Positions 1,522 to 57,078 of a stretch of 57,868 nucleotides of DNA are shown here, piece by piece. The DNA is from Octopus bimaculoides (lineage: Eukaryota): the NCBI RefSeq assembly GCF_001194135.2, contig NC_068988.1:24258238-24316105 (forward strand). Direction: 5' to 3'. Position 1 is the first letter of the stretch. Each line of letters begins with the position of its first letter. Under the pieces are notes generated by a model. The model worked only from the letters and a program-made list of their open reading frames with translations, was not told the DNA's origin and did not search any database. The position numbers and the translations under genes are program-made.

Positions 1522-1538
1522 CAGTAGTAGTAGTAGTA
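1358..1538. repeat. Compound (AAT)n-(TAG)n microsatellite, probably the tail of the adjacent minus-strand SINE
   Basis: AAT run 1358-1481 switches to TAG run 1482-1538, which abuts the SINE 3' end at 1542. Confidence 0.95.
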
Positions 1539-1541
1539 ACC

Positions 1542-1668
1542 CTTTCTACTATAGGCACAAAGTCTAAATTTTGCGGAAGGGGAGTAAGTCGATTATATCG
1601 ACTCCAGTACTCAACTGCTACTTATTTCATCAACCCTGAAAGTATGAAAGGCAAAGTCAGCCTCGGTG
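1542..1668 (-). mobile_element. SINE family A, 5'-truncated copy
   Basis: Reverse complement aligns with the body and tail of the near-intact copy at 38071 (gcctttcatcctttcggggtcgat...agtac...tggggtcgat...tgtgcctatagtagaaag). Confidence 0.85.
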
Positions 1669-1757
1669 GAATAAGTACCAATTGCGTACTGGGGTCGATC
1701 TAATCGACTGGCCCCCTCCCCCAAAAATGTTGGGCTTTGTCCCTAGAGTACAAAAGA
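1669..1757 (+). mobile_element. SINE family A, 3' half (inverted relative to 1542-1668)
   Basis: ataagtaccaattgcgtactggggtcgatctaatcgactggccccctcccccaaaaat matches the 3' halves of copies at 2868 and 32545. Confidence 0.85.
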
Positions 1758-2867: not shown

Positions 2868-3079
2868 AGGCAGAAGCTAGCAGAAACGTTAGCACTTCGG
2901 GTGAAATGCCTAGCGGTATTTGATCTGTCCTTACATTGTGAGTTCAAATTCCGCCGAGGTCGATTTTGCCTTTCATCCCTTTCGGTGTCGATAAATTTAG
3001 TACCAGTTTCGTACTGGGTTTGATCTAATCGACTGGCCTCCTCCCCAAAATGTTCAGGTCTTGTGCATATAGTAGAAAG
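2868..3079 (+). mobile_element. tRNA-derived SINE family A, full length
   Basis: Head ggcagaagctagcagaaacgttagc with B-box-like GAGTTCAAATTCC; more than 10 homologous copies within the window. Confidence 0.9.
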
Positions 3080-4735
3080 AAATATGTATTGCATTCAACT
3101 CCAACTTTCCACTTCAACATCTAAAAGTTGATAAAATGAATATCTGACATGTCTTAGATTAGATTAGATTAACTTTCTACTGAGGGTGATGGGTGACCTA
3201 CTGCTTAGACTTTCGTATTTAATATATTATGCGCTCAGTTTCCGACGAGGCTAGATGTTCGTTTCAACATTCTAGTAGCAGTAAATAATAGCAAATTGTG
3301 ACGTGGGTTTAATCGACAATACTATTTCTCCAACATTTCTTGGTTGTGTGCATAATTCAGAAATTAATGTTTATTTGTGCCACTGGCTTATTTCCACAAA
3401 ATTCTAAATTCAAAATCTAAACAGATATGTAGATCAGTCTCGGTTAAATACTTTAACACCAGGACTCCAAGGAATTTGTGTTCGTTTATGTCGGTGACAA
3501 CAATCGCTGCAATGTAGATATGAAGTAAATTTCTGTCAGTTTATTTGGCTTAAGGTGTGGAAAATCCAACGTTTCGGATATTTGTGTGTAATCAAAGAGA
3601 AAATTATATATTGTAATTAAATCTGCAGACCAATGCCGAAACTGCAGAAAATGAATGTATCATTATTTTTGCAAAATAAATTTACCTTTTAAATAACGAA
3701 CGCTAGGGGAAAATTGCATATAATCAATTGTTTGAAGTAGCAGCCGCAAAACTTTGTCAATCACATCCCGCAGTTTTAAAAGAAGGTTACAATAAATAAT
3801 GTTTTCCTGGCTTGCTTCTAAGGTTAAATGATGGCCAATTGAGGAATGTATTTCACCATAAATATAGCTTGTTCATTGATGCCATGGAACAAAATATCAA
3901 CCACAACAATAACCATTTTTATCACACTATTAACTACAAAGGAGTAACGTTATTCCCAGTTGAATATATATCGTAATAATACACCAGGGTGAACTTATGT
4001 TCTGGTAACTAAATCGTGAAAAAATGTTGGAAATTTATTAAGCACGCTCAAATGACTGGAAAAAAAGAACAAGCTTTTAACAATGTTAACGAATAATTTC
4101 TCAGGAAAATTGAAATATTATCTTTCTAATATGTAATTTTAGTGCTAGCTGGGTGCCTTTTCAACACTTAGGCTCAAAGAGTTAGCGAAATTACAATAAT
4201 ACGAAGTTAACATTGAATTCAAAATCATAATTGTGAATCAATATCGGAAATTAATTTTAGAACATTGTGGGTATGTACACCTGAGCTTCAGGTAATGAAT
4301 AATGACTTCTTAAGAACCGTGTGATTAAATTATCAATAATATTTAAGACAGCATTCCTGAGATTACTTAGATAGACTATCATTTATGTAGCTAAGCAGGT
4401 GGTTTCTTAACTTCTCTGACTTCTCTGATATTCATCCAAGTACATTGGCAAGAGACAGTTAGATCTACACAGACTTATTATTGTCTAGATTGGACTCATA
4501 AATTGGATTAGAATTATAAACGTTCACGTTTTTTTTTCTTCTTTTTATTATTATTGTTCTATAGCAAAAATACGATGAGAAGACTGGCAAGATATCAAAA
4601 TATAATACCTTTTGTCTCGATATGATAGTATTTTGAAATCGATTGGTTTCTGTAAAGTTTCTGTGGATGGATATTTTCAAAAGTGAATGTACTAAGAGAA
4701 AAATATCTGACAGTCAAAACTTCGAAGATCAGACA

Positions 4736-4860: not shown

Positions 4861-5115
4861 ATAGGAAAATACCAAGGCTTAGCAAGAGAAATGCGAAGAT
4901 ACTGGAAGATTTATGGATAAGTAGTTAGGGGCTCCGCGGTACTTCCCTTAATGAGATCGGTGTAACTACAAACATTGCCTAAAAAAACTGAAATATTCTG
5001 TATGAATAACAAGAATTGTTCAAAAGGCCTTCCATATCAAAGGAGACCAATTGTAACACGGTATCAAAGACATTGATACCAGATACAACACACTTGTATA
5101 AACCATTCAATAATA
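4861..5115 (+). mobile_element. Degenerate 3' fragment of an R4/Dong-like (REL-endonuclease) non-LTR retrotransposon
   Basis: Frame from 4861 reads IGKYQGLAREMRRYW, resembling the conserved K-x-x-KY-x-x-LA-x-E-x-x-x-x-W motif near the C-terminus of R4/Dong ORFs (recalled motif). Downstream frame is broken. Confidence 0.55.
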
Positions 5116-5118
5116 TTC

Positions 5119-5330
5119 ATTTCTACCATAGGCACAAGGCCTGAGGTTTTGGCAAACGGAGTTAATTGAATAAATCGACCCCAATGGTCAACCGATATTT
5201 ATTTGATCGACTCCGAAAGGATAGAAGGCAAAACCGACTTTTGTAGAATTTGAACTCAGAACGTAAACATGGATGAAATACCGCTAAACATTTTGTCCGT
5301 CGCACTAACGATTCTGTCAACTCACCACTT
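5119..5330 (-). mobile_element. SINE family A, full length
   Basis: Reverse complement aligns end to end with the 38071 copy. Confidence 0.9.
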
Positions 5331-5350
5331 TTATACAATTTGATGATAAT

Positions 5351-5440
5351 CTCTTTTACTATAGGCACAAGGCCTGACATTTCGAGGGATGGAGCTAGTC
5401 GATTATATTGACCCCAGTGCTCGAATGGTACTTATTTTAT
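5351..5440 (-). mobile_element. SINE family A, 3' fragment
   Basis: tactataggcacaaggcctga...gaccccagtgctcgaatggtacttatttta. Confidence 0.8.
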
Positions 5441-6105: not shown

Positions 6106-6380
6106 GCCCACCTTCATTTTGGGATCACCACTATTTTATAATCTCCCCTTCTTCCTAGCTCTCCAGTGTAACCCCTCTGTCCGGCATTCGCCATGATAGA
6201 TCGCTAGCCACTACACATTCTTAATTTTCTCCCCGTGTTTCTTTCTGTGTTTCTTTCTATGGAGGAGTGTAGGTTCGAAACGTTAAAGACTTTTTCACTT
6301 CCCGAGCGTTAAACTAATACATCTGTTTGTTGTCTACACCACCTGTCTTCGTCTTTTGGGTTTTTTTGCGAATTCTCCCC
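6106..6380 (+). mobile_element. Short Penelope-type repeat (family E) with a hammerhead-like fold at 6252-6289
   Basis: Homologous to 33673-33845. Contains UCUUU-CUAUGGA-G-GAGU(GUAG)GUUC-GAAAC-GUU-AAAGA. Flanked by (CA)n and (TA)n. Confidence 0.6.
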
Positions 6381-6484
6381 TATATACATACATATATATA
6401 TATATATAAATTAAAATTTAGAGGTAATACTTGACAATTGTAAGCACCTGTGTATGCCAGCTAGTGGTTGAGGTGAAAGAATAA

Positions 6485-7031
6485 ATTGTAAATCCAAAAA
6501 ATAACAACAAAACTACAAAGGATTCCGCGGTACACGTGTTTCAAGCTTTATATGTGTATAATTTACAATATAATTTACAATATAAAGCTATCCTCAGCCG
6601 CAAAATTATTTCCCTCGCAGGAAATTATACCACATCGGCGTTAAAGTGGGAAGAAAGGTGTGATGTAAGAGGTGAAGATCCTTTCGGTATTCTGTATAGT
6701 ACTATACCTCGTATAATTCTCCACCCACACATAATCTCTCCGTGAATCGTGGCAAGGTATGGACGGTTTTCGGAGGACCGGAGAGATTATGTGTGGGTGG
6801 AGAATTATACGAGGTATAGTACTATACAGAATACCGAAAGGATCTTCACCTCTTACATCACACCTTTCTTCCCACTTTAACGCCGATGTGGTATAATTTC
6901 CTGTGAAGGAAATAATTTTGCGGCTGAGGATAGCTTTATATTGTAAATTATATTGTAAATTATACACATATAAAGCTTGAAACACGTGTACCGCGGAATC
7001 CTTTGTAGTTTTGTTGTTATTTTTTGGATTT

Positions 7032-7036
<5 letters not shown>
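6485..7036. mobile_element. Near-perfect 552-bp fold-back (MITE/foldback-like) element: 258-bp arms, 36-nt spacer
   Basis: 6485-6742 is the reverse complement of 6779-7036 at 256/258 positions, checked block by block. The only differences are 6614/6907 and 6617/6904. Confidence 0.85.
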
Positions 7037-7073
<37 letters not shown>

Positions 7074-7552
7074 AATATATATACAAATATATAAAAGCAC
7101 TATGCTCATTATTATGTTAGGAAACTATAGATATTTAGCTTTTGGTATTACACAGTATAGCGGTTTAGCAGAGCATAAGGTAATGTAAGTGTTGTGAAGC
7201 GGTCTTTTGCTACTGTTGTATCTGTCTTTTGACGACGGTTGTCGCTCTGACAGATATTGTTATATTCCGCAGTTGTCGATAGAATGGTTCTGTCTGACAC
7301 TGTATGACCCCCCAGTCGTACAGTGTTATTATCCTCAAACGGTTGGATCGATATAACGTCCACTCATTAAAAGAGTATAATTACTATATCGGCACAGATA
7401 CCGCTATCAAAACAGTCTACACATACTCTAGACCTCCTGACATTCTTCCTGTCGACCGGCCACTGGTCTATTTATATTGGCTGGCTACTACCACTTTTTT
7501 TTTACCGGGAGGGGTGTTCAGTTGTACTATATAACAGTAAATATAAATGTAA

Positions 7553-15575: not shown

Positions 15576-15616
15576 ACATAATCGTTGTATTAATAGTCAA
15601 TATTAGAACTTAGCGT

Positions 15617-16023
15617 AGGAGTGGCTGTGTGGTAAGTAGCTTGCTTACCAACCACATGGTCCCGGGTTCAGTCCCACTGCGTGGCATCTTGGGCAAGTGT
15701 CTTCTACTATAGCCTCGGGCCGACCAAAGCCTTGTGAGTGGATTTGGTAGACGGAAACTGGAAGAAGCCTGTCATATATATGTATATATATATATATGTA
15801 TGTGTGTGTGTTTGTATGTCTGTGTTTGTCCTCCCAACATCGCTTGACAACCGATGCTGGTGTGTTTATGTCCCCGTAACTTAGCGGTTCGGCAAAAGAG
15901 ACCCATAGAATAAGTACTAGGCTTCCAAAGAATAAGTCCTGGGGTCGATTTGCTCGACTAAAGGCGGTGCTCCAGCATGGCCACAGTGAAAAGACTGAAA
16001 CAAGTAAAAAGGTAAAAAGAGTA
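15617..16023 (+). mobile_element. Bipartite tRNA-derived SINE family B, full length
   Basis: Head ggagtggctgtgtggtaag...gggttcagtccc; CORE/MIR-like word caccttgggcaagtgtctt in the family (this copy reads catcttgggcaagtgtctt); internal (TA/TG)n; right half ending in (gtaaaaga)n. Strongly similar to 27941-28350. Confidence 0.93.
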
Positions 16024-19025: not shown

Positions 19026-21349
19026 TCCATAACGATATTTCTGCTCCAGCAACTCAGCGCTGAATCTGTCTGAAATGTAGTAGAACATAGCTCAGCTTCA
19101 AAACTTTGATGTCCAAGTCACAAAAGCAAATTTTGAAGGGAATAGTAGTCAATTCTTATGATTTCTATATAGAAGCAAATAGGAAATAGCGACTACTGTT
19201 TCTCTTTCTTTTATTTCTTTTTCTTCTTTTCTACTGTTTTCTTTCTCCCCCTTCCTACTTATTATTAATATCTGATTTTTTCCTTTACTTTCTTTTCCCT
19301 GTAACAACTAACTTGTATAAGCAGACGCCAGGAGATTTTGTGCGCGTGCGAAGTTGTGCGTGCATACACATATATATACATTTGTATATATTTATGTCTT
19401 GCCTATATATGTCTGTATATGTATGCAGCCATGTACCTGTGTCTGTATGTTTAGTGTATATATGTATATTACAGATTGTTTGGTATGTGCATATACTGCT
19501 AAATGTATATGTAATGTAGCGTGCAAATTTTTTTAAACGGATATATCTTTTAATTTATTGATTTATTAATGTTTTGCAGCTAATTATTTACCCTAGGTAT
19601 TCAGGCCTTTTCCTTATTTATAAGCTATTTTTGATTTCAAGGTTTCTTCGATTTTTATAATAATATGATTTTAAACCGCAATTTGTTATTTCTTGCAACC
19701 GGTTATTGAAAAGACCGTTTGTTGAAAGGACCAATGAAACAAAAACTATTTTCAAATGTGTATCTATCAATTGTATATTTGTGCATATAACCTTATTTTT
19801 GCTTCACTCTAAACAAAACTGTCCGACGAACAGGAACGTGAAACTCTGAGTAACGGTTTTTGTCCTATTTTTGCTGCATTTTAATAAAATATATATATAT
19901 AAATCTTTAGTTAAATATATTCAATGAGAATATTATATACTGAATTTATATGGAGTGGTCTATTGTATCAAAGTATTAATACTATTAAAGTATTTATGTA
20001 TTTAATACGTATGTATTTAATAATATATTTTAAAATATATATGATATATTATAATATNNNNNNNNNNNNNNNNNNNNNNNNNNNNNNNNNNNNNNNNNNN
20101 NNNNNNNNNNNNNNNNNNNNNNNNNNNNNNNNNNNNNNNNNNNNNNNNNNNNNNNNNNNNNNNNNNNNNNNNNNNNNNNNNNNNNNNNNNNNNNNNNNNN
20201 NNNNNNNNNNNNNNNNNNNNNNNNNNNNNNNNNNNNNNNNNNNNNNNNNNNNNNNNNNNNNNNNNNNNNNNNNNNNNNNNNNNNNNNNNNNNNNNNNNNN
20301 NNNNNNNNNNNNNNNNNNNNNNNNNNNNNNNNNNNNATATATATATATATATATATATATAGGCTTCGGACTCTTCATAAACTTTTAAGGCAATATCAAT
20401 GCGCAATAAACAAACCGTGAAAGACAAAGATTTTGTATCAGAAAATAACAGTTTAATTAGGTACCGCAACTTCTGAATAATGTCCAACCAAGATGAAGTA
20501 TGTGAATTACAAAGTAATAGAATGTTGCACGCTGAAACTGTAACTAGCAAGGCAGTTAGTCTGTTTTACTTTGATAGTCAGTTCTGTTTTATCTCCTATT
20601 TGATCTCAATTAGAAGCGCACTGCTATGAACCGTTTTTACGCGTCCAACACTTTCAATGAACCAAACAGCGCTGATTTGAATATTGAACTGAATACTGTG
20701 TTGTAATCTATGACAAGCAATATTTCTAACGATCAATGTATGCATGAAACGGAGAATAATTATAGTAGAATGTCCCTTCAAAAGAAAGTACTGTAAATAA
20801 ACATTTTATGAGGACAATCAAATAACCTCACAATATAACACATTCGGAATAGAACCTGTAATTATCTCATATGGCTTAGAAGAATAGATTTTGAAACAGA
20901 TTTCCCAGAAATTAACAGCGCAGGCATTTTTTTTAATATAACAACTTTTCAAAATTAATTGCACTTTGCATGTTCGACAAATAAAATATCTTCAAATGTC
21001 AATGCTTTCCCTGGGGTAGAATACCTGAACAAGCTAGATAAGAATAGTGACACTACATTTGTAATAAGCAATAACGCATAAAACATCATGAAAGCTAACA
21101 GTAATGCCTGAAATAAGCATTAATAGTAATGAAGCCACTCTCAAATTAGATACGAAATTTTAAGGCGTAAAGTATATTTTATTCTTAACGATGGCAGGAA
21201 TAGTTTTGTACTCCAAACTTAGGGAAATGAAAATTTTCTAAATGCGATCTAGAGAAATTTAACAAACATACAGAGCTACGAAGAAGAATTAGAAATGTAA
21301 CTTGATTACAACAACTGCATAATACTAGTGCAACAATTAACTTGTTTAG

Positions 21350-21569
21350 ATATAATGGCTTCAAGTTTTGGCGCCAGTGCAGCACATTCGGGGGAGAGGT
21401 TAAATCGATTACATCGATTTCGATGCTCAATTTGTACTTATTTAAACGTAACCCGAAATAGTGCAAGCCAAGGTGGACCGCCGGAATTTGAACTTATAAC
21501 GTAAAGACGGACGAAATGCTGCTAATAATTTACTCCCCTGCAGTAACAGTTCTATCCGCTCACTGCCTT
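21350..21569 (-). mobile_element. SINE family A, old diverged copy
   Basis: gaatttgaact...gacgaaatgc...ccgctcactgcctta is the reverse complement of the family A head. Confidence 0.75.
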
Positions 21570-21584
21570 AAACTTGTTTCGATA

Positions 21585-21815
21585 TATTGCTTTCAAATTT
21601 TGACACAATGCCAGCAATTTAGAAGAAGGAAGTAAGTAGATTACATCGACCCCAGTGCTCAAATGGTTCTTATTTCATCGATCCTGAAACCTGAAAGGAT
21701 GAAAGTCAATGTCGACTCGACTTCGGTTTAATTTGAGCTCAGAATGTAAGCACGGACGAAATGCCGTTAAGCACTGTGCCCAGCGCGCTAACGATTCTGC
21801 GAGTGCACCAGCTTT
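21585..21815 (-). mobile_element. SINE family A, diverged copy in tandem with the previous one
   Basis: catcgaccccagtgctc...gaaaggatgaaag...gacgaaatgccgttaagc...ctaacgattctgc. Confidence 0.8.
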
Positions 21816-22124
21816 GATATAATAATAATAAAATTAAACAGAAATAAATTTCGTCTTACCTCTTGTAAGAACACCGGATAGAAGAACAACCTAGAGTGGA
21901 TAATCTAATATTGGAGTTTCGAACTTTCCTAATACGCATCTTATCGTATGTTCGGTTAGTCCTCATCAGCTAGATCTACCAAACACGAAATATTAAAATA
22001 TCCGTTACATCAATGTTAGAATATTAGGTTGAATGCCTAGCCGTAAATAGAACCGAATTCAGTGAAAAGGTTTTCATTAAAAAACATAAATAGAATAGTA
22101 TTATTTTCCAGTATTATTTTCCAG

Positions 22125-37430: not shown

Positions 37431-38070
37431 CATGCATATACGTATATATGCATATATACGTGTTTATGTGTGTGTTGTGAGTGTATTCTTTCGCGAGAAG
37501 TATTTTAGCAACCTTTCAGTCAGTCATTAGAGACACTCCAGTATATGGCAGGTTAAGACAGAATCTTAGATTAGCGCAATTAGCTACTTCTAAACATTTA
37601 ATTGGGGCCCATAAAAAAACGTTGTATCCGCCCTCATATAAAAAACCATTCGTATGAAAATTTGTTTTCATGCAATGCAAAATGGAACATTGTATAACAA
37701 ACATACAATTAATGCAATCGACTTAATCATTTTTATTTTTCCTCTATATTTTTCTTTAAAAATTGCTTGGAGATAATAGAAAGGACGTTGATTAGTAATT
37801 CTTGGTTATGCAGAATATGAATTTGTATGCAAACTTCATTACTGTAACTAGTTATTTGTAACATAAATAAAGGGGACAAGTTGAGAGACTTGTCAGAGGG
37901 GAAGTCAAAAGATTATGATATTTGTTCCGTCTCTGATTTCGAATCTAGTCGCTGCCGTCTTTGCCTTTCATCACTGTGTTGTTCATAAAATAAATTACTA
38001 GTCAAAAACAGTGGATTGGTAGAAGTTTCAGAGAATCGGACTAGAGGCCTTGTAATATCTGTGCTATGGA

Positions 38071-38306
38071 AAGGCGGTGAGCTCGCAGAATCGTTATTAC
38101 GCCGGGCGAAATGCTTACCGGTATTTCGTCTGCCGTTACGTGCTGAGTTCAAATTCCGCCGAGGTCGACTTTTCTTTTCATCCTTTCGGGGTCGATAAAT
38201 TAAGTACCAGTTACGAACTGGAGTCGATGTAATCGACTTAATCCCTTTATCTGTACTTGTTTTTTTCTCCTCTATGTTTAGCCCCTTGTAGGCAATAAAG
38301 AAATAA
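38071..38306 (+). mobile_element. SINE family A, near-intact full-length copy
   Basis: ggcggtgagctcgcagaatcgtta...gagttcaaattccgccgaggtcgac...tcctttcggggtcgataaattaagtaccag...aataaagaaataa. Confidence 0.93.
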
Positions 38307-38503
38307 GAAACGTTAGCACGCCAGGCAGGATGCTTAGCGCTATTCCGTCTGTCTTTAAGTTCTGAGTTCAAATTCTGCCGAGGTGGACTTTGCCTTTCAT
38401 CCTTTTTGGGTCGATAAATTAAGTAGCACTTTCGTACTGGAGTTGATCTAATCGAGTGGCACCCTCCCCAAAAATATTGGACCTTGTGCTTACAGCAGAA
38501 AGG
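38307..38503 (+). mobile_element. SINE family A, second head-to-tail unit (5'-truncated)
   Basis: Begins gaaacgttagcacgcc directly at the tail of the previous unit. Confidence 0.88.
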
Positions 38504-38504
38504 A

Positions 38505-38656
38505 TCTGAGTTCAAATTCCACCAACGTCGACTTTGTCTTTCATTTTTGGTGAGTTGATAAATTAAGTAGCATTGAAATACTGGGGTCGATATCATCGGC
38601 TAGTCTCCTCCACAAAAAAAAGAAAAAGAATTCAGGCCTTGTGCTTTGTAGAAAGA
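38505..38656 (+). mobile_element. SINE family A, third head-to-tail unit (5'-truncated at the B box)
   Basis: Begins tctgagttcaaattcc; ends gtagaaag plus an (ATT)n tail. Confidence 0.85.
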
Positions 38657-38961
38657 ATTATTATTATCATTATCATTATTCAGAATGTTTAGTGGAAAAA
38701 TTGGTTCAGACGAAGAAACGAATTCTGGGGTATTTAATTACATTCCTTTATTTTGTCAAGTGAAATCCCATAAGTAGGTATTTTCTCTTTCATCTTTCCA
38801 ACGTCAATAAACTAAATAGCGACTAACAAACAGGGACGACCTTTAATTGACGAGTTATTTTCCTACAAAAATGTTTGGTCTGGAGCCAAAATTAATAAAC
38901 CTTTCTCCTACAAATATTACTTATAATATTATGAGCCATACGTTCTTCACGATTTATGATG

Positions 38962-39332: not shown

Positions 39333-39529
39333 TTTTCTAATTTTGGCACAAGACCAGAAATTTCGAGGGGACAAAGCAATTACCTCAACTCCACTGGCAC
39401 TTTATTTTATCGACTCTGAAAGGCAAAGTTGACATGAGTGGCATTTGAACTCAGAACGTAACAAGCTGGAAGAAATGCTGCTGAGCATTTCGTTCCGATG
39501 CACTAACGATTCTGCCAGTTTGTCACCTT
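39333..39529 (-). mobile_element. SINE family A
   Basis: ggcacaagaccagaaattt...gaaaggcaaagttgac...atttgaactcagaacg...ctaacgattctgccag. Confidence 0.82.
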
Positions 39530-41134
39530 CATAACAATAATAATAGTAATAATAACAATAATAAATTATTATTGTTATTGTATCGAGAAGGAGCAAACAA
39601 TAACAACAATATGCATATATTTGAGAAAGATAATTGTTTGTTATGATTTAGTTAGGCCATGGGAATAGCGCACTCATGACCTTAATAGGTCTTCCGAAGA
39701 TAACTGAAGGGAATCGGGAACTAATATGTCTCAGTGGATAGAATTCATTCAATGAGGTTCCTTCTATTTTCCGTCTAACGAATACTGCAGGTCAGTTTCT
39801 TAACTTTATGAAAACAAATGCCGTACAATCCTTAGTCATATCGAAATTACGTCTATCCTTTGAAGAACTATATACCTGACTGTTCACTTCACACCTGCTT
39901 CCTTTTATCCGTTGTAAATTCTCATATGTGTAATTAATGCCAAACTCAGACGAAATTTTCCTATACTAATACATAGTCGCACGAATAACATTAAATCAAG
40001 TATTTTACTCATGACATCAGATAGAAGAACTAAATATGTAATTGTGGACAACACATTCTCAAGAAATGGCGAGAAAGGTATCACCAACTTATATACTATG
40101 CATCTCTACATTAAATTATGTAGTTACTGCATTAATCTTCTCATATAACATGTTTCAGCTACGCCAACGTGTCAAGCTGTATATTACATATCTATGTTAA
40201 GAATAATTTAATGTCACCCTGTTCATATCTCTATCTCATCTAACACTAATAAAAATTGACATACATAGATTCAATTAAATGGAGAACAGCGCAATGTATT
40301 CAATGACGGTTGCACGCAAAACAGTTTATTTTGCGGAGGACGGGAAGTAATATTTTATATTCTTACATACAGGTTAGATTCGCAAATTCTCTGCTCTTAT
40401 ATCAAGATGATTATAAACAGAGTGGCTTAAGACAGAAATCAAACAGCATCCATATTTATAATACCGCTAGTAAAGAGAAAGAAACTTTCTACAATTCTCA
40501 GTTGGCTATATTGATGTAATTTTCATTAAGATTCTTTCGTAACCTTCTTGTTCTTTGTTATAGTGTGTCGAACAACAAAGGAAAGATAAGGCGTCAAAAT
40601 TCCGTGCTGAGAATGCAGATTCAAATGAGTGTTTCTTGTTTCTTCTTGAATTCGATTTCTCTTATCTTGATACTATTGTATATTTTTACAACTCTATCAC
40701 ACTACCTCAGCGAATAAAGATTTACGTCTTAGATTTACTGTCGCCCGCTTATCTACAGAGTGACTCCAAAGTTCTGTTCTTACCAGCTCTTCAATGAATT
40801 GTAGACAAAAAAATGGCTTATACTGAGACGCAATTTTACTAATACAACATGTATTGAATTTTGCTCTCTCTCTCAATAGGATTATTGTACATTCCCAAAG
40901 CCTTTCAATCTTGGAAATTATGGCAGTCGTCATATGAGATTTATTGGATCAGTTTATAGAAATATATTCTTTTTTGATTATTCATTTCTTTGATATGCAA
41001 TGTAATGTAAACTATGTTGTTAACACCTGTAGAAAATTTCTCACAATTAATGTTGCTATAATGTTAATTATTTTTTATTGTCAAAAGATCACATATTTTC
41101 AATGTGCAGTTTTAATTGCCTTGAATACATAAGT

Positions 41135-43845: not shown

Positions 43846-44062
43846 AAGGCGGCAAGCTGGCAGAATTGTAAGTACTCAGAGCAAAATTCTTAGCAGTATT
43901 TTTTCTGTCGACATGATCTGAATTCAAATTTCGCCGAAGTCGACTTTGCCTTTCATCCTTTCGGGTTCGATAAATTCAATAGCATTGAAACACTGGGGTC
44001 GAAGTAATCGACTTGTCTCCTCGCACAAAATATCAGGTTCCCTGTGCCTATAGTAGAAAGGA
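43846..44062 (+). mobile_element. SINE family A, full length with a (GTT)n/(ATT)n tail
   Basis: aaggcggcaagctggcagaa...gaattcaaatttcgccgaagtcgactttgcctttcatcctttcggg. Confidence 0.88.
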
Positions 44063-47000
44063 TTGCTGTTGTTGTTATTATTATTTTTAGTATTATTATT
44101 ATTAACATCATTATTATTATAGTTGTTGCTGTCGCTTTATTTTGTTATTTCACTGAAAAACATTTCTTTTTTCACGTATCTTCCAATCGATATCTTTTTG
44201 GAACATACTATTGTTGCATTATTTGTCTATTATAATCGTATCCTCCACGGATTGTTACTATTCTAACAAGCTTTTTCATTACTTCTTTTCCTTATTCTGC
44301 TTCAATATTTTATATACATCCATTCTGATGCAAAAATATTGTAGTAAAAATATATTGCCTATATGAAAAGGTAAAACAAAATAATTATCAACGCTTTAAG
44401 CTTATGTTGTGTTTCAAGATAGAGATGATAACACGTCTCGGGTATCATATTAATAGCGGATGAAAGAAGTGGATAGGTATAAGTAGGGGTACGTTTTGAA
44501 AGAATTTGGTACTGCAGATGGAACCTGATGAGGAATGTTAGATATGTGCAAAAGAAAAATCGGCAGTAGCAGAAACGTGGTATGTGTTGGTCAGAGTAGC
44601 TTTCATGAAAATGGTACGAATATATAGGTTAAGCTGCTTGTATTTCAGGATAATTTCCCTGGTGAAGGAATGGATTAGCTTTGGTTACTAGCATGAACTT
44701 CATTAAGAATATGTGCTTGTTGATTTCGCTGGGCACAGAATTTTGTCCAGTTTATTTATCCCTCTCCAAAATTATGTCTATTATACAGACGACTGTAATG
44801 GTGTCAAGTTTCTCACTCGTTAGCAGCTCACTCCATTAAATTCCTCCATTAAAATAATTGAGCTTGAATGTATAGATATATACATATGCATAAACACATG
44901 TATATGCAGCGTTGATAAATGATCCTTCAACGGTTTCGATGATGAGTATGAATTAATCAATGAAGTCCGCTATCTCCACATTCAATAAACGTGCTGTTGG
45001 CTTTGGATTTCACTGGCAAGTGTGTATCTAAAGTAACTGGTACACCGAAATCGCGTGATTTCAGTGTGCTGCACTTCCTCAGTAACAGAAAATATGTGTC
45101 AATATTGAATCTTTGAGTAACCGCAACAATCCACCCAGTCATTTCCACCCAATCACTCACCCGTGTCACTCACAAACCGCAGGTACACGTGACATTACGT
45201 TAAAAAGCAAAAAAAAAAAATACTTGTTCCACATGACATGCAGTGACATCGATCCCTAGACTTCCCAAGTACAAATCGAAACTCTTAACTTGGCAACGAT
45301 GACAGCATCCACATAGATGTGTGATTCAAAGATTTGCTTCAGAAAGCTGTGGCACGATAGCAATGCACGAAACATTGGTGAAGCGTCTTCAGCCGTAATG
45401 TCACATCAGACATTCAATGAAATCGTATAAAATTGAAAGACGGAAATCGTATGGATGTATGTCGTGACCTACGAGCGCGTGGGTGGTAAACATAAAATGA
45501 AGGATTTATCGCCGGTTAATCACCTCTATCAACCGTTTGCGTCTTATTAATGGAGTCCCTCTCCTGCAAGCGATTTTTAATTTAGGGATAACTTGATACC
45601 TTATAATTATCTTGAAATAATTCTAACTATTACAGCCGGATATAAACCATTTTATCTTCCTCGCTCTCTTCAAATCCCGAAGGACTTATGCAATAAAAAC
45701 ACACGCGTGCGAACACACACTCACACACACACATATATTTCATATACAAATACACAAATATAATATAAATATGTGTGTGCATATATGCATATATGAATGT
45801 ATGTATGCTTGTATGTATATATGTATCTATATATGTATGTGTGCATACGTATACAGGTGAGTGCCTTTCTGAAGTAGGATCTTTATTCTTTTGCTTTCAG
45901 AGCTTCTAATTATCGTTCTTTCGAAATCATAGCGAAGAGAATGGGACGGGAAATTACTGATAGCCACATAGCCAGTAGGGAAGAAATACTTAAACTTTAA
46001 GAAAAGAAAAAAATATCTTGCATTTTTTCTTGTAACTACAAGCACTCTCACACACATAACCATAAGTACAGAAACACACACATACACACACGCGCGCACA
46101 TACATACAGACGTGCATTTTCACGCACATGTATAAATACATACATACTTATACACATATATATATATGTGTGTGTGTGTGTGTGTTTGTGTGAGGGTGGG
46201 TGGGTTTGTGTATATGTATATATTAGACAGAATATATATATATAAGACATATTCCATATATTCAATAAGACATTCAATACTTTATTTCATAGTACCATCC
46301 ATTTTTATTTTATATTATATATTGTATTTTATATTATATATTGTATATTCCATATTCTATATCCCACATTGGTTTTGCAGGAATATAAATAAAACATAAA
46401 AAACAGACAGTGTTGGAACGCTTTTAAACAAAATAATATATTCCTCTATACACAATCATACANNNNNNNNNNNNNNNNNNNNNNNNNNNNNNNNNNNNNN
46501 NNNNNNNNNNNNNNNNNNNNNNNNNNNNNNNNNNNNNNNNNNNNNNNNNNNNNNNNNNNNNNNNNNNNNNNNNNNNNNNNNNNNNNNNNNNNNNNNNNNN
46601 NNNNNNNNNNNNNNNNNNNNNNNNNNNNNNNNNNNNNNNNNNNNNNNNNNNNNNNNNNNNNNNNNNNNNNNNNNNNNNNNNNNNNNNNNNNNNNNNNNNN
46701 NNNNNNNNNNNNNNNNNNNNNNNNGGATACCATATAGATATTTGTTTAATTCAATTATAAAGATAAATTAAATATAGAGATATACTAGTGATAAATAATA
46801 ATTTATTTATAATACAATATTACATTAAACACTACGAATATAATATAAGATAACATAATATTATATAACATAAATAATTATAAAAACCATAAAAGGTCAA
46901 CAAATTGTTTCGACTTATATACATTTTTTTCTGATATTCATAATCATAGCTCCATTATATATAAAGTCACTTCAGGGTCATGATTTAGAAAAAGACGAAA

Positions 47001-50357: not shown

Positions 50358-50414
50358 TATATATATAGTTTTAAATCTCTAAATGAGATCTTTGTAGTTA
50401 CAGTATCGTGTAGT

Positions 50415-51108
50415 TTATTTGCAAACATAACGTTGCCATCCGGCATAGGATTATGTTACTGATTTTTAACTCCTGAAAGACATCTTTTCCAGCTGGTTAT
50501 CGACACATGATTTGTGTCTGAATCATACTGTAAGTAAGGCAGTTTACTACCCACTTCTAACCGTTATCATTACCAGCAACCCAATAGTTTCTGGGTAATT
50601 TCCAATCTTAGGTGCAGGACAACCACCTGCGTAGAGACAGCAGCCACCCGACCTTACTCACAGTATATAATTATCGAAGCCAATTACATTACTCAGAGAC
50701 CAGCTGGGGAAGATGCTTTCCTGGGGTTAAAAAACAACATAATGCTATGTATGACTGCTACGTTATGTTGAGAAATAAACTTTACAACTTCACTCTAGCT
50801 ACATGCATCGTTCAGAGATTTAAAACTAGTTGTTTTTCTCCTTACGAGATCAGCAACTATCAGCCACTTCGATAAGTATGTACTATGAGTAAGGTAAGGT
50901 GGCTAGTGTCTCTAGCGAGGGGGTTGTCCAACACCGGAGACGGGAAATTACCCAGAAACCATTGGTCTTCTGGTACTTCTAACAGCTAGAAGAGTGTAGT
51001 AATCCGCCTTACTTCCTGTGTCGATAACCAGCTGGAAAAATGATTTCCTGGGATTAAAATGTAGTAACACAGTCCTATGCAGGACTGCCACGTTAATTTG
51101 GCAAATAA
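50415..51108. repeat. Diverged long inverted repeat (arms 50415-50679 / 50867-51108) with a third partial copy at 50699-50780
   Basis: Colinear anchors ttttccagctggttatcgacaca, gtttctgggtaatttcc, ggacaacc, accttactca and ttatcgaag are present on opposite strands. Confidence 0.85.
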
Positions 51109-51113
51109 TCTTC

Positions 51114-51149
<36 letters not shown>

Positions 51150-54791: not shown

Positions 54792-56362
54792 GACGCGTGT
54801 ATCTCTGTGTGTTTTTATGACTGTATTCGTTGCGATGTGCGTATACATCTGACGTCAATGCGTTATCTCCCATGTGCGTGTGAGGGAGTTTTGATGCGTG
54901 TTACTGTAGTATGTGTGTGAGGTATGCTATAGCGTGTGTCAGATATTCATAAGTAAAAGATAGATTGTGAAAAAAACTAAATTGAACTGTCTGCTTAATA
55001 ACATAACATTCTTCATATTTGCTGTACCGTTTCCTGTCACTATCGCTACCGAGTATCAGTTTACATGTACTTTTAAGGCCAATATATATTTGCTGATTCT
55101 CAGCTCCAGCCGTTGGCAATTCTACATTACTTCATTCTGCTTGGAGACCAACAAGTTATGGAAGGAAATTTTAAACATTTGATTATGTACAGATAAAAGA
55201 GAAACTTTATCATAAGTTCAACAAATCTGTTATAACGTCTGTTAAAATAAGAATCAAAAACTACATTTCGGGCATTCATCGACTAAAATATATAATGTAT
55301 ATGTGATTGTTCTGGCTATCAATGCAAGTAGTATTAGATATTGAATTCCTGACATGAGTGTTATGTATCATGCAGTATTGTAATCATCTAAAGATACCTT
55401 CATCTAATTTACAGTACAGTAGAAGTTAGTAAATCTGTTATCTTTAAGAATGTACTAAATACCTCACATACTTTATTACACTGCTGATGAAGTTGGATAA
55501 ATTTTAATTCGTTTTTTAAAATTTTAATTAATTAAAACAGGAATCAGTAGATACCAAATTAGACTATGTAAGATTGTTGTTAAATTATTGCCGACTTCAT
55601 ACAATGAATCGGAACTGGGGAAAAAAGTAAGGCTAAATTATACTAATTGGTTTCTGATTAAAATGTAGAATTAATTAGGAGTATTTTGGATTTTGTTGTT
55701 TTATTATGTTTGATAGGGTAATTAGAACGACTGTTCTCAGTAAGGATTTGGTATATTAGAATAGGATAATGAGTGTGTTGATACTAATGGATATTATCAT
55801 TGTTTTTCTTTCTTAGCCCTAGGCCGTATCTAATGGAACAGAATTGTGATCAAAGGCTTTCTATCTGCAGTCATTTGGTATTTAATACAAATATATCGTA
55901 ACTCCTCGGACTGCATTAAACAAGGCGTCCACCCATTTTTCAACTCTGTAGAACAAGATTTGGAAGTTCATTCTCACTTTTGTAAAAAGATTTACAGTTC
56001 AGAAAGAAGCAACTTGCAATTTCCTCGGCTCAGATTTCTATATAATCCATTGTCGTTGCTGCTGCTGCTACCCTCTTCTGGTTTTCAGCCCGGAACCAAT
56101 TTCGTTCGTATATAACCAAATTCAAACGGGTTCCAATTTTGAACACCAAGTCTGAGATACAAATAGCATGTCAAGTTCCACATTAAGCAATAGGTTCCCC
56201 CTACTTTAAATTATTTGATTTTCGGAGAAATTGGTTGCTATTTCAAGGAAATTGGGTGACACAGTAGAAATTACCTGTTGGACTCGATCGTATTCTAAAT
56301 GACTAGTGTTTGAAAGAAAATAACGACATAACCAGTTTGCACTCTCGTTGGTGTATAGTGAT

Positions 56363-56527
56363 AGGAGTGGCTGTGTGGTAAGTAGCTTGCTTACGAACCA
56401 CATGGTTCCCGGTTCAGTCCCACTGCGTAGCACCTTGGACAAGTGTCTTCTACTATAGCCACGGGCCGACCAAAGCCTTGTGAGTGGATTTGGTAGACGG
56501 AAGCTGAAAAAAGCCCGTCGTATATAT
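56363..56527 (+). mobile_element. SINE family B, left monomer only (ends at the start of the internal microsatellite)
   Basis: Nearly identical to 15617-15780. Confidence 0.92.
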
Positions 56528-57078
56528 GCTGCTTCTGTGACTTTAAGCTCCCGCTGTTTCACCATCCTGTTTTAATATTTTTATAACGACTGCAAAGAAA
56601 TAAATTATAAAGGCGATACAGGGGTATTGAAAGTGCGGAGAGCCAAATGGAAAACTACGATCTGTACTAAACACTTTNNNNNNNNNNNNNNNNNNNNNNN
56701 NNNNNNNNNNNNNNNNNNNNNNNNNNNNNNNNNNNNNNNNNNNNNNNNNNNNNNNNNNNNNNNNNNNNNNNNNNNNNNNNNNNNNNNNNNNNNNNNNNNN
56801 NNNNNNNNNNNNNNNNNNNNNNNNNNNNNNNNNNNNNNNNNNNNNNNNNNNNNNNNNNNNNNNNNNNNNNNNNNNNNNNNNNNNNNNNNNNNNNNNNNNN
56901 NNNNNNNNNNNNNNNNNNNNNNNNNNNNNNNNNNNNNNNNNNNNNNNNNNNNNNNNNNNNNNNNNNNNNNNNNNNNNNNNNNNNNNNNNNNNNNNNNNNN
57001 NNNNNNNGCTATTTAGGTGATGATTTTTTAAGTTAGCTTACCAATTATTTTTGTTGGTAGTTAATTTATAATATATTG

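What the first reader, a model, noticed from the sequence alone, without database searches (positions are those of the whole stretch)
6485..7036. Near-perfect 552-bp palindrome with nested palindromes and TGT...ACA ends
The 258-bp arms differ at only 2 positions (one gives a G-U pair) around a 36-nt GC-richer spacer, so the element is very young or homogenised by conversion. The arms are non-coding, unrelated to any other repeat in the window, and contain a perfect 14-bp palindrome (GTATAGTACTATAC, 6704-6717), CCGCGG/ACACGTGT/AAGCTT palindromes and a short tandem duplication (ATAATTTACAAT). Trimming 2 bp gives TGT...ACA termini (6487/7034) with AAAT/ATAT flanks, compatible with a Ginger-type or foldback MITE and a degenerate 4-bp TSD. 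It would extrude a cruciform or produce ~260-bp dsRNA (endo-siRNA or ADAR substrate). A hairpin end of a linear viral or Polinton element is an alternative.
Basis: partly seen in the sequence, partly recalled or inferred. Interest (0 to 1): 0.72.

Follow-up and report, generated by a model that had tools for sequence, protein, structure and literature searches.

The report
Young 552-bp non-coding DNA palindrome
A real, almost perfect 552-bp inverted duplication of non-coding DNA sits at the edge of a TA microsatellite in a repeat-rich animal-like genome; it is most likely a by-product of snap-back DNA repair or replication, or else a small foldback transposon, and it is not viral.

Summary
Arms 6485-6742 and 6779-7036 (258 nt) differ at two positions around a 36-nt spacer. 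The pairing continues to 6481/7040 with one more mismatch.

The window is a gapped draft scaffold of an unidentified AT-rich eukaryote, crowded with microsatellites. It has no recognisable genes. The arm has no second copy in the window and no match in any collection I could search.

The nested short palindromes are no more frequent than window background. The viral or Polinton hairpin idea fails because there are no such genes. A Ginger-type MITE fits the TGTAA/TTACA ends but fails the TSD test (AAAT vs ATAT).

A second near-perfect inverted repeat (26609-26727 / 27457-27575) has the same layout: unique flank, arm, short spacer, inverted arm, then (TA)n. It also keeps a fold-back junction next to the unfolded sequence. 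In both structures the outer junction runs 6-7 nt into TA-like sequence with exactly one mismatch.

Ranking:
- Local snap-back inverted duplication captured in the (TA)n tract: about 0.42.
- Foldback MITE: about 0.30.
- Assembly or library artefact: about 0.10.

It belongs to a known kind of structure. Interest is modest.

The parts
6485..6742 (+). Left arm of the palindrome (258 nt, 36% GC). It is open in one frame over its whole length, with no homologue.
   Evidence: arm pairing; 86 open codons, seen in 1.4% of shuffles but in 10% of window 258-mers; no real protein similarity.
6743..6778 (+). Asymmetric 36-nt spacer (53% GC). It contains CGGAG (6771-6775), complementary to the last 5 nt of the left arm (CTCCG, 6738-6742), 8 nt out of register with the turnaround.
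   Evidence: Because the spacer is not itself palindromic, a strand turn-around in an assembly graph cannot explain the structure (inference).
6779..7036 (-). Right arm, the inverted copy of the left arm. It differs at 6904 and 6907.
   Evidence: 98.9% over 262 nt.
6481..6484 (.). Left outer junction. The TA-like hexamer 6481-6486 pairs with the first six bases of the (TA)n tract (7035-7040) except at 6484/7037. I read it as imperfect microhomology; the alternative is a decayed TSD plus target.
   Evidence: The sister structure shows the same one-mismatch pattern at 26611/27573.
7035..7093 (.). (TA)n microsatellite abutting the right arm. It is perfect over 7035-7069 and overlaps the arm end by 2 nt.
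6557..6580 (+). Tandem duplication of a 12-mer (mirror copy 6941-6964). It carries two inverted copies of the terminal 9-mer ATTGTAAAT, inside the loop of a local 10-bp hairpin (6544-6553 / 6580-6589).
6694..6707 (.). Perfect 14-bp palindrome GTATAGTACTATAC (mirror 6814-6827).
6614..6617 (+). The only two differences between the arms (6614/6907 and 6617/6904). Both are transitions, one in a CpG.
6188..6411 (+). Neighbour, not part of the palindrome: a dispersed repeat with a (TACA/TA)n tail. A second copy lies at 33674-33875 (75% identity). It ends 73 bp left of the palindrome.
   Evidence: it is not related to the arm.

Best explanation
The palindrome is a recent, local snap-back (fold-back) inverted duplication. 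It is neither a gene nor a virus end.

Proposed steps (all inferred for this locus):
1. A free 3' end arose just right of what is now the spacer. It was either a broken end or a stalled nascent strand.
2. That end folded back over a loop of about 36 nt and copied about 258 nt of its own strand.
3. The new end was then captured in the neighbouring (TA)n tract through a short, imperfect TA-like match (6481-6486 against 7035-7040). Any DNA that lay in between would have been lost.
4. Two transitions have accumulated between the arms since.

Shown:
- The structure itself and its one-sided contact with the (TA)n tract.
- The absence of coding capacity by homology.
- A sister structure in the same window with a readable fold-back junction.

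Inferred consequences: the DNA can extrude a hairpin or cruciform, and if transcribed it would give about 260 bp of double-stranded RNA.
For: - Layout: unique flank, arm, short asymmetric spacer, inverted arm, then (TA)n on one side only.
- A second, unrelated near-perfect inverted repeat has the same layout: arms 26609-26727 / 27457-27575, one mismatch, right arm running into (TA)n 27569-27598.
- In that sister structure the 11 nt before the right arm (27448-27458, TTTTTGATACA) repeat 26737-26747 in direct orientation. This 11-mer occurs only twice in the window, against 0.2 expected. The inverted arm is therefore joined to the native downstream sequence after an 18-nt spacer with 2 nt (CA) of microhomology, while the left contig runs on unfolded. 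That is the signature of fold-back priming, not of an inserted element.
- Contact with (TA)n is not chance. A random point lies within 3 bp of a tract boundary with probability 0.9%, yet both near-perfect inverted repeats touch one.
- Both outer junctions run 6-7 nt into TA-like sequence with exactly one mismatch (6484/7037 and 26611/27573), although the arms are 99-100% identical. Imperfect microhomology predicts this. A TSD as young as the arms would be expected to be intact (inference: 4 bp x 0.8% gives about 3%).
- No TSD exists beyond the self-complementary AT/TA dinucleotide, and no second copy exists in the window.
- The mechanism is documented. In yeast, fold-back inverted insertions form at breaks by microhomology, with the other end captured by end joining (PMC11724301; PMC7467729). 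Template switching creates hairpins in germlines (PMC5453318 and PMC8794818). Long AT tracts stall forks and break (PMC11797062).
Against: - For this locus itself no unfolded allele and no clean microhomology at the turnaround is visible. The CTCCG/CGGAG pair is 8 nt out of register.
- The documented yeast events are mostly 5-34 bp. This one is 258 bp.
- The ends read TGTAA...TTACA, and the terminal 9-mer recurs twice inside each arm. About 0.03 further copies would be expected by chance in 552 bp. This looks like the subterminal repeats of a transposon.
- The genome could not be searched, so copy number is unknown.
- The argument by analogy depends on a sister structure that spans an assembly gap.
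Confidence: 0.42

Rival explanations
1. A foldback-type non-autonomous DNA transposon (MITE), about 548-554 bp long and almost entirely made of its terminal inverted repeats. It inserted at the left edge of a TA microsatellite. A transposase encoded elsewhere would recognise the terminal and subterminal ATTGTAAAT motifs. Ginger2-like ends are one lead.
For: - TGTAA...TTACA ends match the TGTNR pattern of Ginger elements. Ginger TIRs span 40-270 bp, and Ginger2 prefers AT-rich RTATAY/TATA targets (PMC2836005; PMC3845634).
- All six window copies of the terminal 9-mer lie inside the palindrome.
- Foldback MITEs with almost identical arms that target TA microsatellites exist, for example MuTAnT: 292 bp with 144-bp TIRs (PMC4486113).
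- The left flank keeps a TA-like hexamer. This could be a TSD plus a remnant of the target.
Against: - The flanks AAAT/ATAT are not a duplication, and neither is TATA or CCGG. Shifting the boundary by 1 bp to obtain TATA on the right loses the TGT end and still gives TAAA on the left.
- TA repeats lie on one side only, unlike MuTAnT, and there is no 9-bp TSD.
- There is no other copy, solo end or diverged relative in 53.5 kb, and no transposase-like ORF.
- The sister inverted repeat has the same layout but unrelated sequence and unrelated ends, and it behaves as a fold-back rather than an insertion.
Confidence: 0.3
2. An artefact: the genome holds one arm only, and the inverted copy comes from chimeric fold-back molecules or from local gap filling near a (TA)n tract in a short-read draft assembly.
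For: - The window is a gapped draft with 14 N runs, 9 of which abut (TA)n tracts of at least 6 units. (TA)n tracts are clearly trouble spots for this assembly.
- The two arm differences are 3 bp apart, as a single heterozygous bubble would be.
- The sister structure sits at a contig start next to a gap.
Against: - The spacer is asymmetric. The sequence spacer-plus-right-arm and the junction right-arm-plus-(TA)n must therefore exist in reads, because a graph turn-around needs a self-complementary centre (inference).
- The palindrome lies inside 11 kb of gap-free sequence.
- Random chimeras do not reach consensus coverage.
- Older, diverged inverted repeats of similar size in the window (73-80% identity) show that such structures are real in this genome.
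Confidence: 0.1
3. A retroposon copy with a (TA)n tail whose first-strand cDNA snapped back and copied itself, giving tail-element-loop-inverted element.
For: - A repeat with a (TACA/TA)n tail exists 73 bp away and again at 33674-33875.
- The tail-like tract lies on one side only.
Against: - The arm is unrelated to that repeat (7% and 85% of shuffles scored as well).
- It has no other copy in the window.
- Nothing marks it as a retroposon: Rfam found nothing and no tRNA was detected.
Confidence: 0.04
4. A functional hairpin-RNA locus (a source of endo-siRNA, or a substrate for ADAR editing). This concerns use, not origin, so it can coexist with any origin above.
For: The predicted hairpin is a near-perfect duplex of about 260 bp.
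Against: - There is no evidence of transcription and no Rfam match.
- There is no detectable source gene for the arms.
- A structure this young has had no time to show conservation.
Confidence: 0.05
5. The hairpin end of a linear virus or of a Polinton/Maverick element.
For: Only the hairpin shape.
Against: - No polymerase, integrase, capsid or any Pfam domain appears in the ten largest clean ORFs.
- The longest non-repetitive ORF is 228 codons and is built from dispersed repeats.
- The flanks are ordinary microsatellite and SINE-like host DNA.
- There is no match in viral contigs.
Confidence: 0.01

Closest known systems
Fold-back (snap-back) inverted duplications and templated inverted insertions at DNA breaks (yeast: PMC11724301, PMC7467729, PMC10622511; human: PMC3907307)
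   Same: An inverted copy lies next to its template, separated by a short spacer. One end is made by self-templated synthesis and the other is captured through little or imperfect homology.
   Different: The yeast insertions are mostly 5-34 bp, and the human and yeast chromosomal cases span kilobases to megabases with dicentric intermediates. This one is a 258-bp interstitial event fixed, or at least present, in a germline genome and captured in a TA microsatellite.
Short-range template-switch mutations that create hairpins (PMC5453318, PMC8794818, PMC10710096)
   Same: A single event makes a perfect stem from non-repetitive DNA. The stem can later serve as an RNA hairpin.
   Different: Described stems are tens of bases long, about ten times shorter than this one. 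In the sister structure here the spacer keeps its native orientation, which fits snap-back of a free 3' end (my inference).
MuTAnT / TAFT foldback MITEs that target TA microsatellites (PMC4486113)
   Same: An element of a few hundred bp with almost identical arms forms one hairpin and touches TA repeats.
   Different: MuTAnT has TA repeats on both sides, a 9-bp TSD, 218 copies and a Mutator-like autonomous partner. None of these is seen here.
Ginger2-derived MITEs (PMC2836005, PMC3845634)
   Same: TGTNR ends, long TIRs and an AT-rich target.
   Different: Ginger2 has an identical TATA TSD. Here the flanks are AAAT and ATAT. No integrase-bearing relative was found.
Human palindromic AT-rich repeats, PATRR (PMC7999016)
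   Same: Near-perfect, several-hundred-bp, non-coding palindromes that do not share sequence with each other and are breakage-prone.
   Different: PATRRs are more than 90% AT. These arms are 64% AT, no richer in AT than the surrounding window, and they enclose a 36-nt spacer.

Membership tests
Ginger (Ginger1/Ginger2) DNA transposon or its MITE | TGTNR...YNACA termini | tested here: met
   TGTAA at 6487 and TTACA ending at 7034, but only after trimming 2 bp from the palindrome. I estimate chance at 1-10%, depending on how many known end types are allowed.
Ginger (Ginger1/Ginger2) DNA transposon or its MITE | Identical 4-bp TSD (CCGG/CCGT for Ginger1, TATA for Ginger2) | tested here: not met
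   The flanks are AAAT and ATAT, against the rule. A 1-bp shift gives TAAA/TATA and loses the TGT end.
Ginger (Ginger1/Ginger2) DNA transposon or its MITE | Related copies and an autonomous partner with a Gypsy-like integrase | not testable with these tools
   The window holds no other copy and no integrase-like ORF. No eukaryotic genome collection was available.
MITE (generic) | Terminal inverted repeats and small size | tested here: met
   The arms are 258-262 bp and the whole structure is 552-560 bp.
MITE (generic) | Target site duplication | tested here: inconclusive
   Only the self-complementary AT or TA dinucleotide is shared. I compared the flanks by eye at 2-9 bp and at boundary shifts of -4 to +4 and found no match.
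MITE (generic) | Many homogeneous copies | not testable with these tools
   There are no further copies in 53.5 kb. Viral, metagenome and prokaryote contig scans gave no hits, but those collections do not hold this genome.
Foldback (FB) elements | Long arms built from tandem subrepeats | tested here: not met
   The only tandem repeat is a single 12-nt unit repeated twice.
MuTAnT/TAFT-like TA-microsatellite-targeting MITEs | TA repeats on both flanks and a 9-bp TSD | tested here: not met
   The right flank is (TA)17 or longer. The left flank has only a 6-nt TA-like stretch.
Snap-back / fold-back inverted duplication | Inverted copy contiguous with its template across a short non-palindromic spacer | tested here: met
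   The spacer is 36 nt and asymmetric.
Snap-back / fold-back inverted duplication | Microhomology at the turnaround | tested here: inconclusive
   CTCCG (6738-6742) and CGGAG (6771-6775) are 8 nt out of register. The sister structure shows a clean 2-nt CA microhomology.
Snap-back / fold-back inverted duplication | An allele or ancestor with one arm and the native downstream sequence | not testable with these tools
   None is visible for 6485-7036. For the sister structure, the left contig continues unfolded past the junction.
PATRR | More than 90% A+T | tested here: not met
   The arms are 64% A+T. The definition is from PMC7999016.
Polinton/Maverick or linear-virus hairpin end | Adjacent virus-type genes (polymerase, integrase, capsid) | tested here: not met
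   The ten largest clean ORFs of the window have no Pfam domain, and there is no long clean ORF.
hpRNA / endo-siRNA locus | Transcription and small RNAs from the arms | not testable with these tools
   No expression data are available. Rfam finds nothing.

The most novel reading that the evidence does not exclude
In this genome, snap-back copying followed by capture in TA microsatellites is a recurrent and still ongoing germline process. It mints long, perfect hairpins from ordinary DNA: two young cases in 54 kb, one apparently still present alongside its unfolded form. If so, it would be a steady source of long double-stranded RNA substrates and fragile sites, independent of transposons.
Probability: 0.22. 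Interest if true: 0.55.

Novelty: new member of a known kind. Interest (0 to 1): 0.3.

Why it matters
Long near-perfect palindromes are unstable and usually short-lived, so each one records a recent event.

If the snap-back reading is right, TA microsatellites in this genome act as capture sites that turn ordinary DNA into 100-260-bp hairpins. That is an order of magnitude longer than the template-switch hairpins described so far. It would be a transposon-independent source of fragile sites and of double-stranded RNA.

If the structure is a MITE, it is an ordinary new family. In either case it is not a gene, not a virus end and not a regulatory RNA that any current library recognises.

Tried and rejected
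Searches that found nothing:
- Protein search with the arm and spacer translation: no homologue.
- A 1,670-aa string of the window's largest clean ORFs, separated by X, to identify the organism: no hit.
- Exact look-ups of five window ORFs in public assemblies: none on record.
- Exact-pattern scans of viral contigs, metagenome contigs (two scans) and prokaryote genome contigs: 0 hits. These collections do not cover eukaryotic genomes.
- Full-text search for three 20-21-mers of the window's commonest dispersed repeat, to name the species: 0 papers.
- Rfam and tRNA scans: nothing.
- Pfam on four translations of the palindrome: only sub-threshold noise.
- The species remains unidentified.

Leads rejected:
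- HMMER against 1.84 billion representatives gave 4 hits, the best at E = 2e-23. All are bacterial Ig-like tandem-repeat proteins in which up to 13 weak 34-aa stretches are summed, so I treat them as spurious.
- The arm is not a relative of the neighbouring (TA)n-tailed repeat.
- Nested short palindromes as a special feature: at window background.
- A single arm folds only marginally better than shuffles (z = -2.0 as DNA, -1.7 as RNA).
- The 86-codon open frame across the arm: 1.4% of shuffles but 10% of real window segments show the same, so it is not evidence of coding.
- A strand turn-around in a de Bruijn graph as the cause: it needs a self-complementary centre, and the spacer is asymmetric.

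Full report
**1. The observation**

The palindrome is real and far beyond chance.
- The arms are 6485-6742 and 6779-7036, 258 nt each. They differ at 6614/6907 (C opposite A) and 6617/6904 (G opposite T).
- Pairing continues to 6481/7040 with one more mismatch, at 6484/7037.
- The 36-nt spacer (6743-6778) has 53% GC against 36% in the arms.
- As a single strand the region folds at -463.6 kcal/mol as RNA (z = -47.5) and -311.9 kcal/mol as DNA (z = -48.9).
- One correction: the 14-bp palindrome lies at 6694-6707 and 6814-6827, not 6704-6717.

**2. Context**

- The window is a draft scaffold of an AT-rich eukaryote, with most 2-kb bins at roughly 28-39% GC.
- It has 14 runs of N and 44 rows of tandem-repeat calls. 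It holds 35 (TA)n tracts of at least 6 units in 53.5 kb of real sequence.
- It has no tRNA, no Rfam match, and no Pfam domain in its ten largest clean ORFs.
- It carries several SINE-like dispersed repeat families.
- Nine of the 14 gaps abut a (TA)n tract, so contigs tend to break there.
- The palindrome lies inside 11 kb of gap-free sequence.
- I could not identify the species. No protein, contig, exact-pattern or literature search returned anything. The available DNA collections do not cover eukaryotic genomes.

**3. What the arms are not**

- They have no second copy, solo end or diverged relative in the window.
- One frame is open over the whole arm (86 codons). This holds for 10% of real 258-nt segments of this microsatellite-rich window.
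- No protein resembles it.
- The four HMMER hits are summed weak matches to bacterial tandem Ig-like repeats and are spurious.
- Short perfect palindromes inside the arm are at background: 4 against a mean of 4.3. A single arm folds only marginally better than shuffles.
- Nothing viral or Polinton-like is nearby.

**4. What stands out**

(a) The right arm runs straight into a (TA)n tract (7035-7069 perfect, to 7093 imperfect). The left arm meets unique sequence.

(b) The terminal 9-mer ATTGTAAAT recurs inverted twice inside each arm, within a 12-nt tandem duplication. All six copies in the 57.9-kb window lie in the palindrome.

(c) The window holds a second, unrelated near-perfect inverted repeat with the same layout.
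- Its arms are 26609-26727 and 27457-27575, with one mismatch at 26611/27573.
- The left arm meets unique sequence. The right arm runs into (TA)n at 27569-27598.
- Its arms flank an N gap.
- The 11 nt just before the right arm (27448-27458) repeat, in direct orientation, the 11 nt at 26737-26747. These lie 9 nt after the left arm. The 11-mer occurs nowhere else in the window.
- The simplest reading is that a 3' end at 26747 folded back over an 18-nt loop, paired by 2 nt (CA with TG), and copied the left arm. The left contig keeps the unfolded continuation.
- This is a fold-back junction, not the inner edge of an inserted element.

(d) Two older inverted repeats of similar size also touch microsatellites.
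- One is 50412-50679 / 50867-51111, at 73% identity over the whole arms and 79% over the best 153 nt.
- The other is 1534-1629 / 1667-1762, about 80% identical, with a 37-nt spacer.
- Diverged palindromes cannot be assembly artefacts, so such structures are real in this genome.
- Their origin is ambiguous. The second could be two independent insertions of a dispersed repeat.

**5. Weighing the origins**

The chance that an inverted-repeat end lies within 3 bp of a (TA)n boundary is 0.9% per end. Both young structures do so, so the association is real.

A TA-targeting foldback MITE could explain it.
- MuTAnT is a precedent.
- The TGTAA/TTACA ends fit the Ginger TGTNR rule.
- However, the flanks AAAT/ATAT are not a duplication, and neither is the TATA of Ginger2.
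- TA repeats lie on one side only.
- In both young structures the outer junction enters TA-like sequence for 6-7 nt with exactly one mismatch, although the arms themselves are 99-100% identical. A TSD as young as the arms should be intact; I estimate about a 3% chance of a hit in 4 bp at 0.8% divergence. An imperfect microhomology used to capture a copied end predicts this pattern.
- The two structures share no sequence and no end motif.

Against the snap-back reading:
- The terminal 9-mer repeat looks transposon-like. I estimate p of about 0.03 by chance.
- The turnaround shows no clean microhomology.
- The documented fold-back insertions are mostly 5-34 bp.

My ranking:

| Origin | Confidence |
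|---|---|
| Local snap-back duplication captured in (TA)n | about 0.42 |
| Foldback MITE | about 0.30 |
| Artefact | about 0.10 |
| Other (retroposon snap-back, something unforeseen) | the remainder |

A role as a hairpin-RNA source is a separate, untestable question, which I put at about 0.05.

**6. Artefact check**

- The spacer is asymmetric. The spacer-to-right-arm junction and the right-arm-to-(TA)n junction must therefore exist in sequenced molecules.
- A strand turn-around in an assembly graph needs a self-complementary centre, which is absent here.
- Random chimeras would not reach consensus coverage.
- The two arm differences 3 bp apart could be one heterozygous bubble. They are equally well two real transitions, one of them at a CpG.

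**7. Comparison and novelty**

The structure works like fold-back inverted duplications (PMC11724301, PMC7467729, PMC3907307) and template-switch hairpins (PMC5453318, PMC8794818). It resembles foldback MITEs (PMC4486113) and PATRRs (PMC7999016) in shape.
- It fails the PATRR composition test: 64% against more than 90% A+T.
- It fails the MuTAnT flank test.
- It fails the Ginger TSD test.

It is a new member of a known kind of structure. The one point of wider interest is the possible recurrent link between snap-back copying and TA microsatellites. That needs the genome-wide census and read-level checks listed under next steps.

Noticed in passing
window 26609-26727 and 27457-27575 (gap 26851-27447; 11-mer at 26737-26747 and 27448-27458): A second near-perfect inverted repeat (119 nt, one mismatch), unrelated in sequence to the finding. 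Its right arm runs into (TA)n at 27569-27598. The 11 nt before the right arm repeat the native sequence after the left arm in direct orientation, which gives a fold-back junction with an 18-nt spacer and 2-nt microhomology. The left contig continues unfolded, so the two forms may be alleles.
   Followed up: partly
window 50366-51149: An older inverted repeat: arms 50412-50679 and 50867-51111, 73-79% identical, with a 187-nt spacer. A third inverted copy of the outer roughly 130 bp lies inside the spacer (50699-50828). Microsatellites lie on both sides: (TA)n begins 4 bp from the right arm, and a TA/CA array ends about 43 bp left of the left arm.
   Followed up: partly
window 1534-1629 and 1667-1762: Two inverted 5' parts of the commonest dispersed repeat, heads pointing outward, about 80% identical with a 37-nt spacer. 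The left one abuts a (TAG)n/(ATA)n array. The arms are no closer to each other than to other copies of the family, so this may be two separate insertions rather than a fold-back.
   Followed up: partly
window 1535-1672, 2874-3094, 5113-5440, 21339-21823, 32572-32752, 38070-38665, 39334-39533, 43846-44067: A dispersed repeat family of about 200 bp with a constant start. Several copies lie in tandem at 38070-38665. It accounts for the longest 'ORF' of the window (228 codons). No protein or Pfam match.
   Followed up: partly
window 15616-16022, 27941-28351, 56362-56528, 30061-30244: A second dispersed family. Two copies are 90-93% identical, so it was active fairly recently.
   Followed up: no
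window 6188-6411 and 33674-33875: A repeat containing GGTTCGAAACG, which resembles a tRNA-type internal promoter box (my reading, untested), and ending in a (TACA/TA)n tail. One copy ends 73 bp left of the palindrome. The other runs into an N gap.
   Followed up: partly
window 28851-29658 and 31412-32192: A direct duplication of about 0.8 kb at 81% identity, 2.5 kb apart, with N gaps between the two copies.
   Followed up: no
whole window (N runs listed): Nine of the 14 N gaps abut a (TA)n tract of at least 6 units. The window has one such tract per 1.5 kb. TA microsatellites are where this assembly breaks.
   Followed up: yes
window 6485-6742 translated: HMMER gives E = 2e-23 to a 2,179-aa bacterial protein made of tandem Ig-like repeats. 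The score is the sum of 13 weak matches to one 34-aa stretch. It shows how repeat proteins inflate whole-sequence E-values and is not homology.
   Followed up: yes
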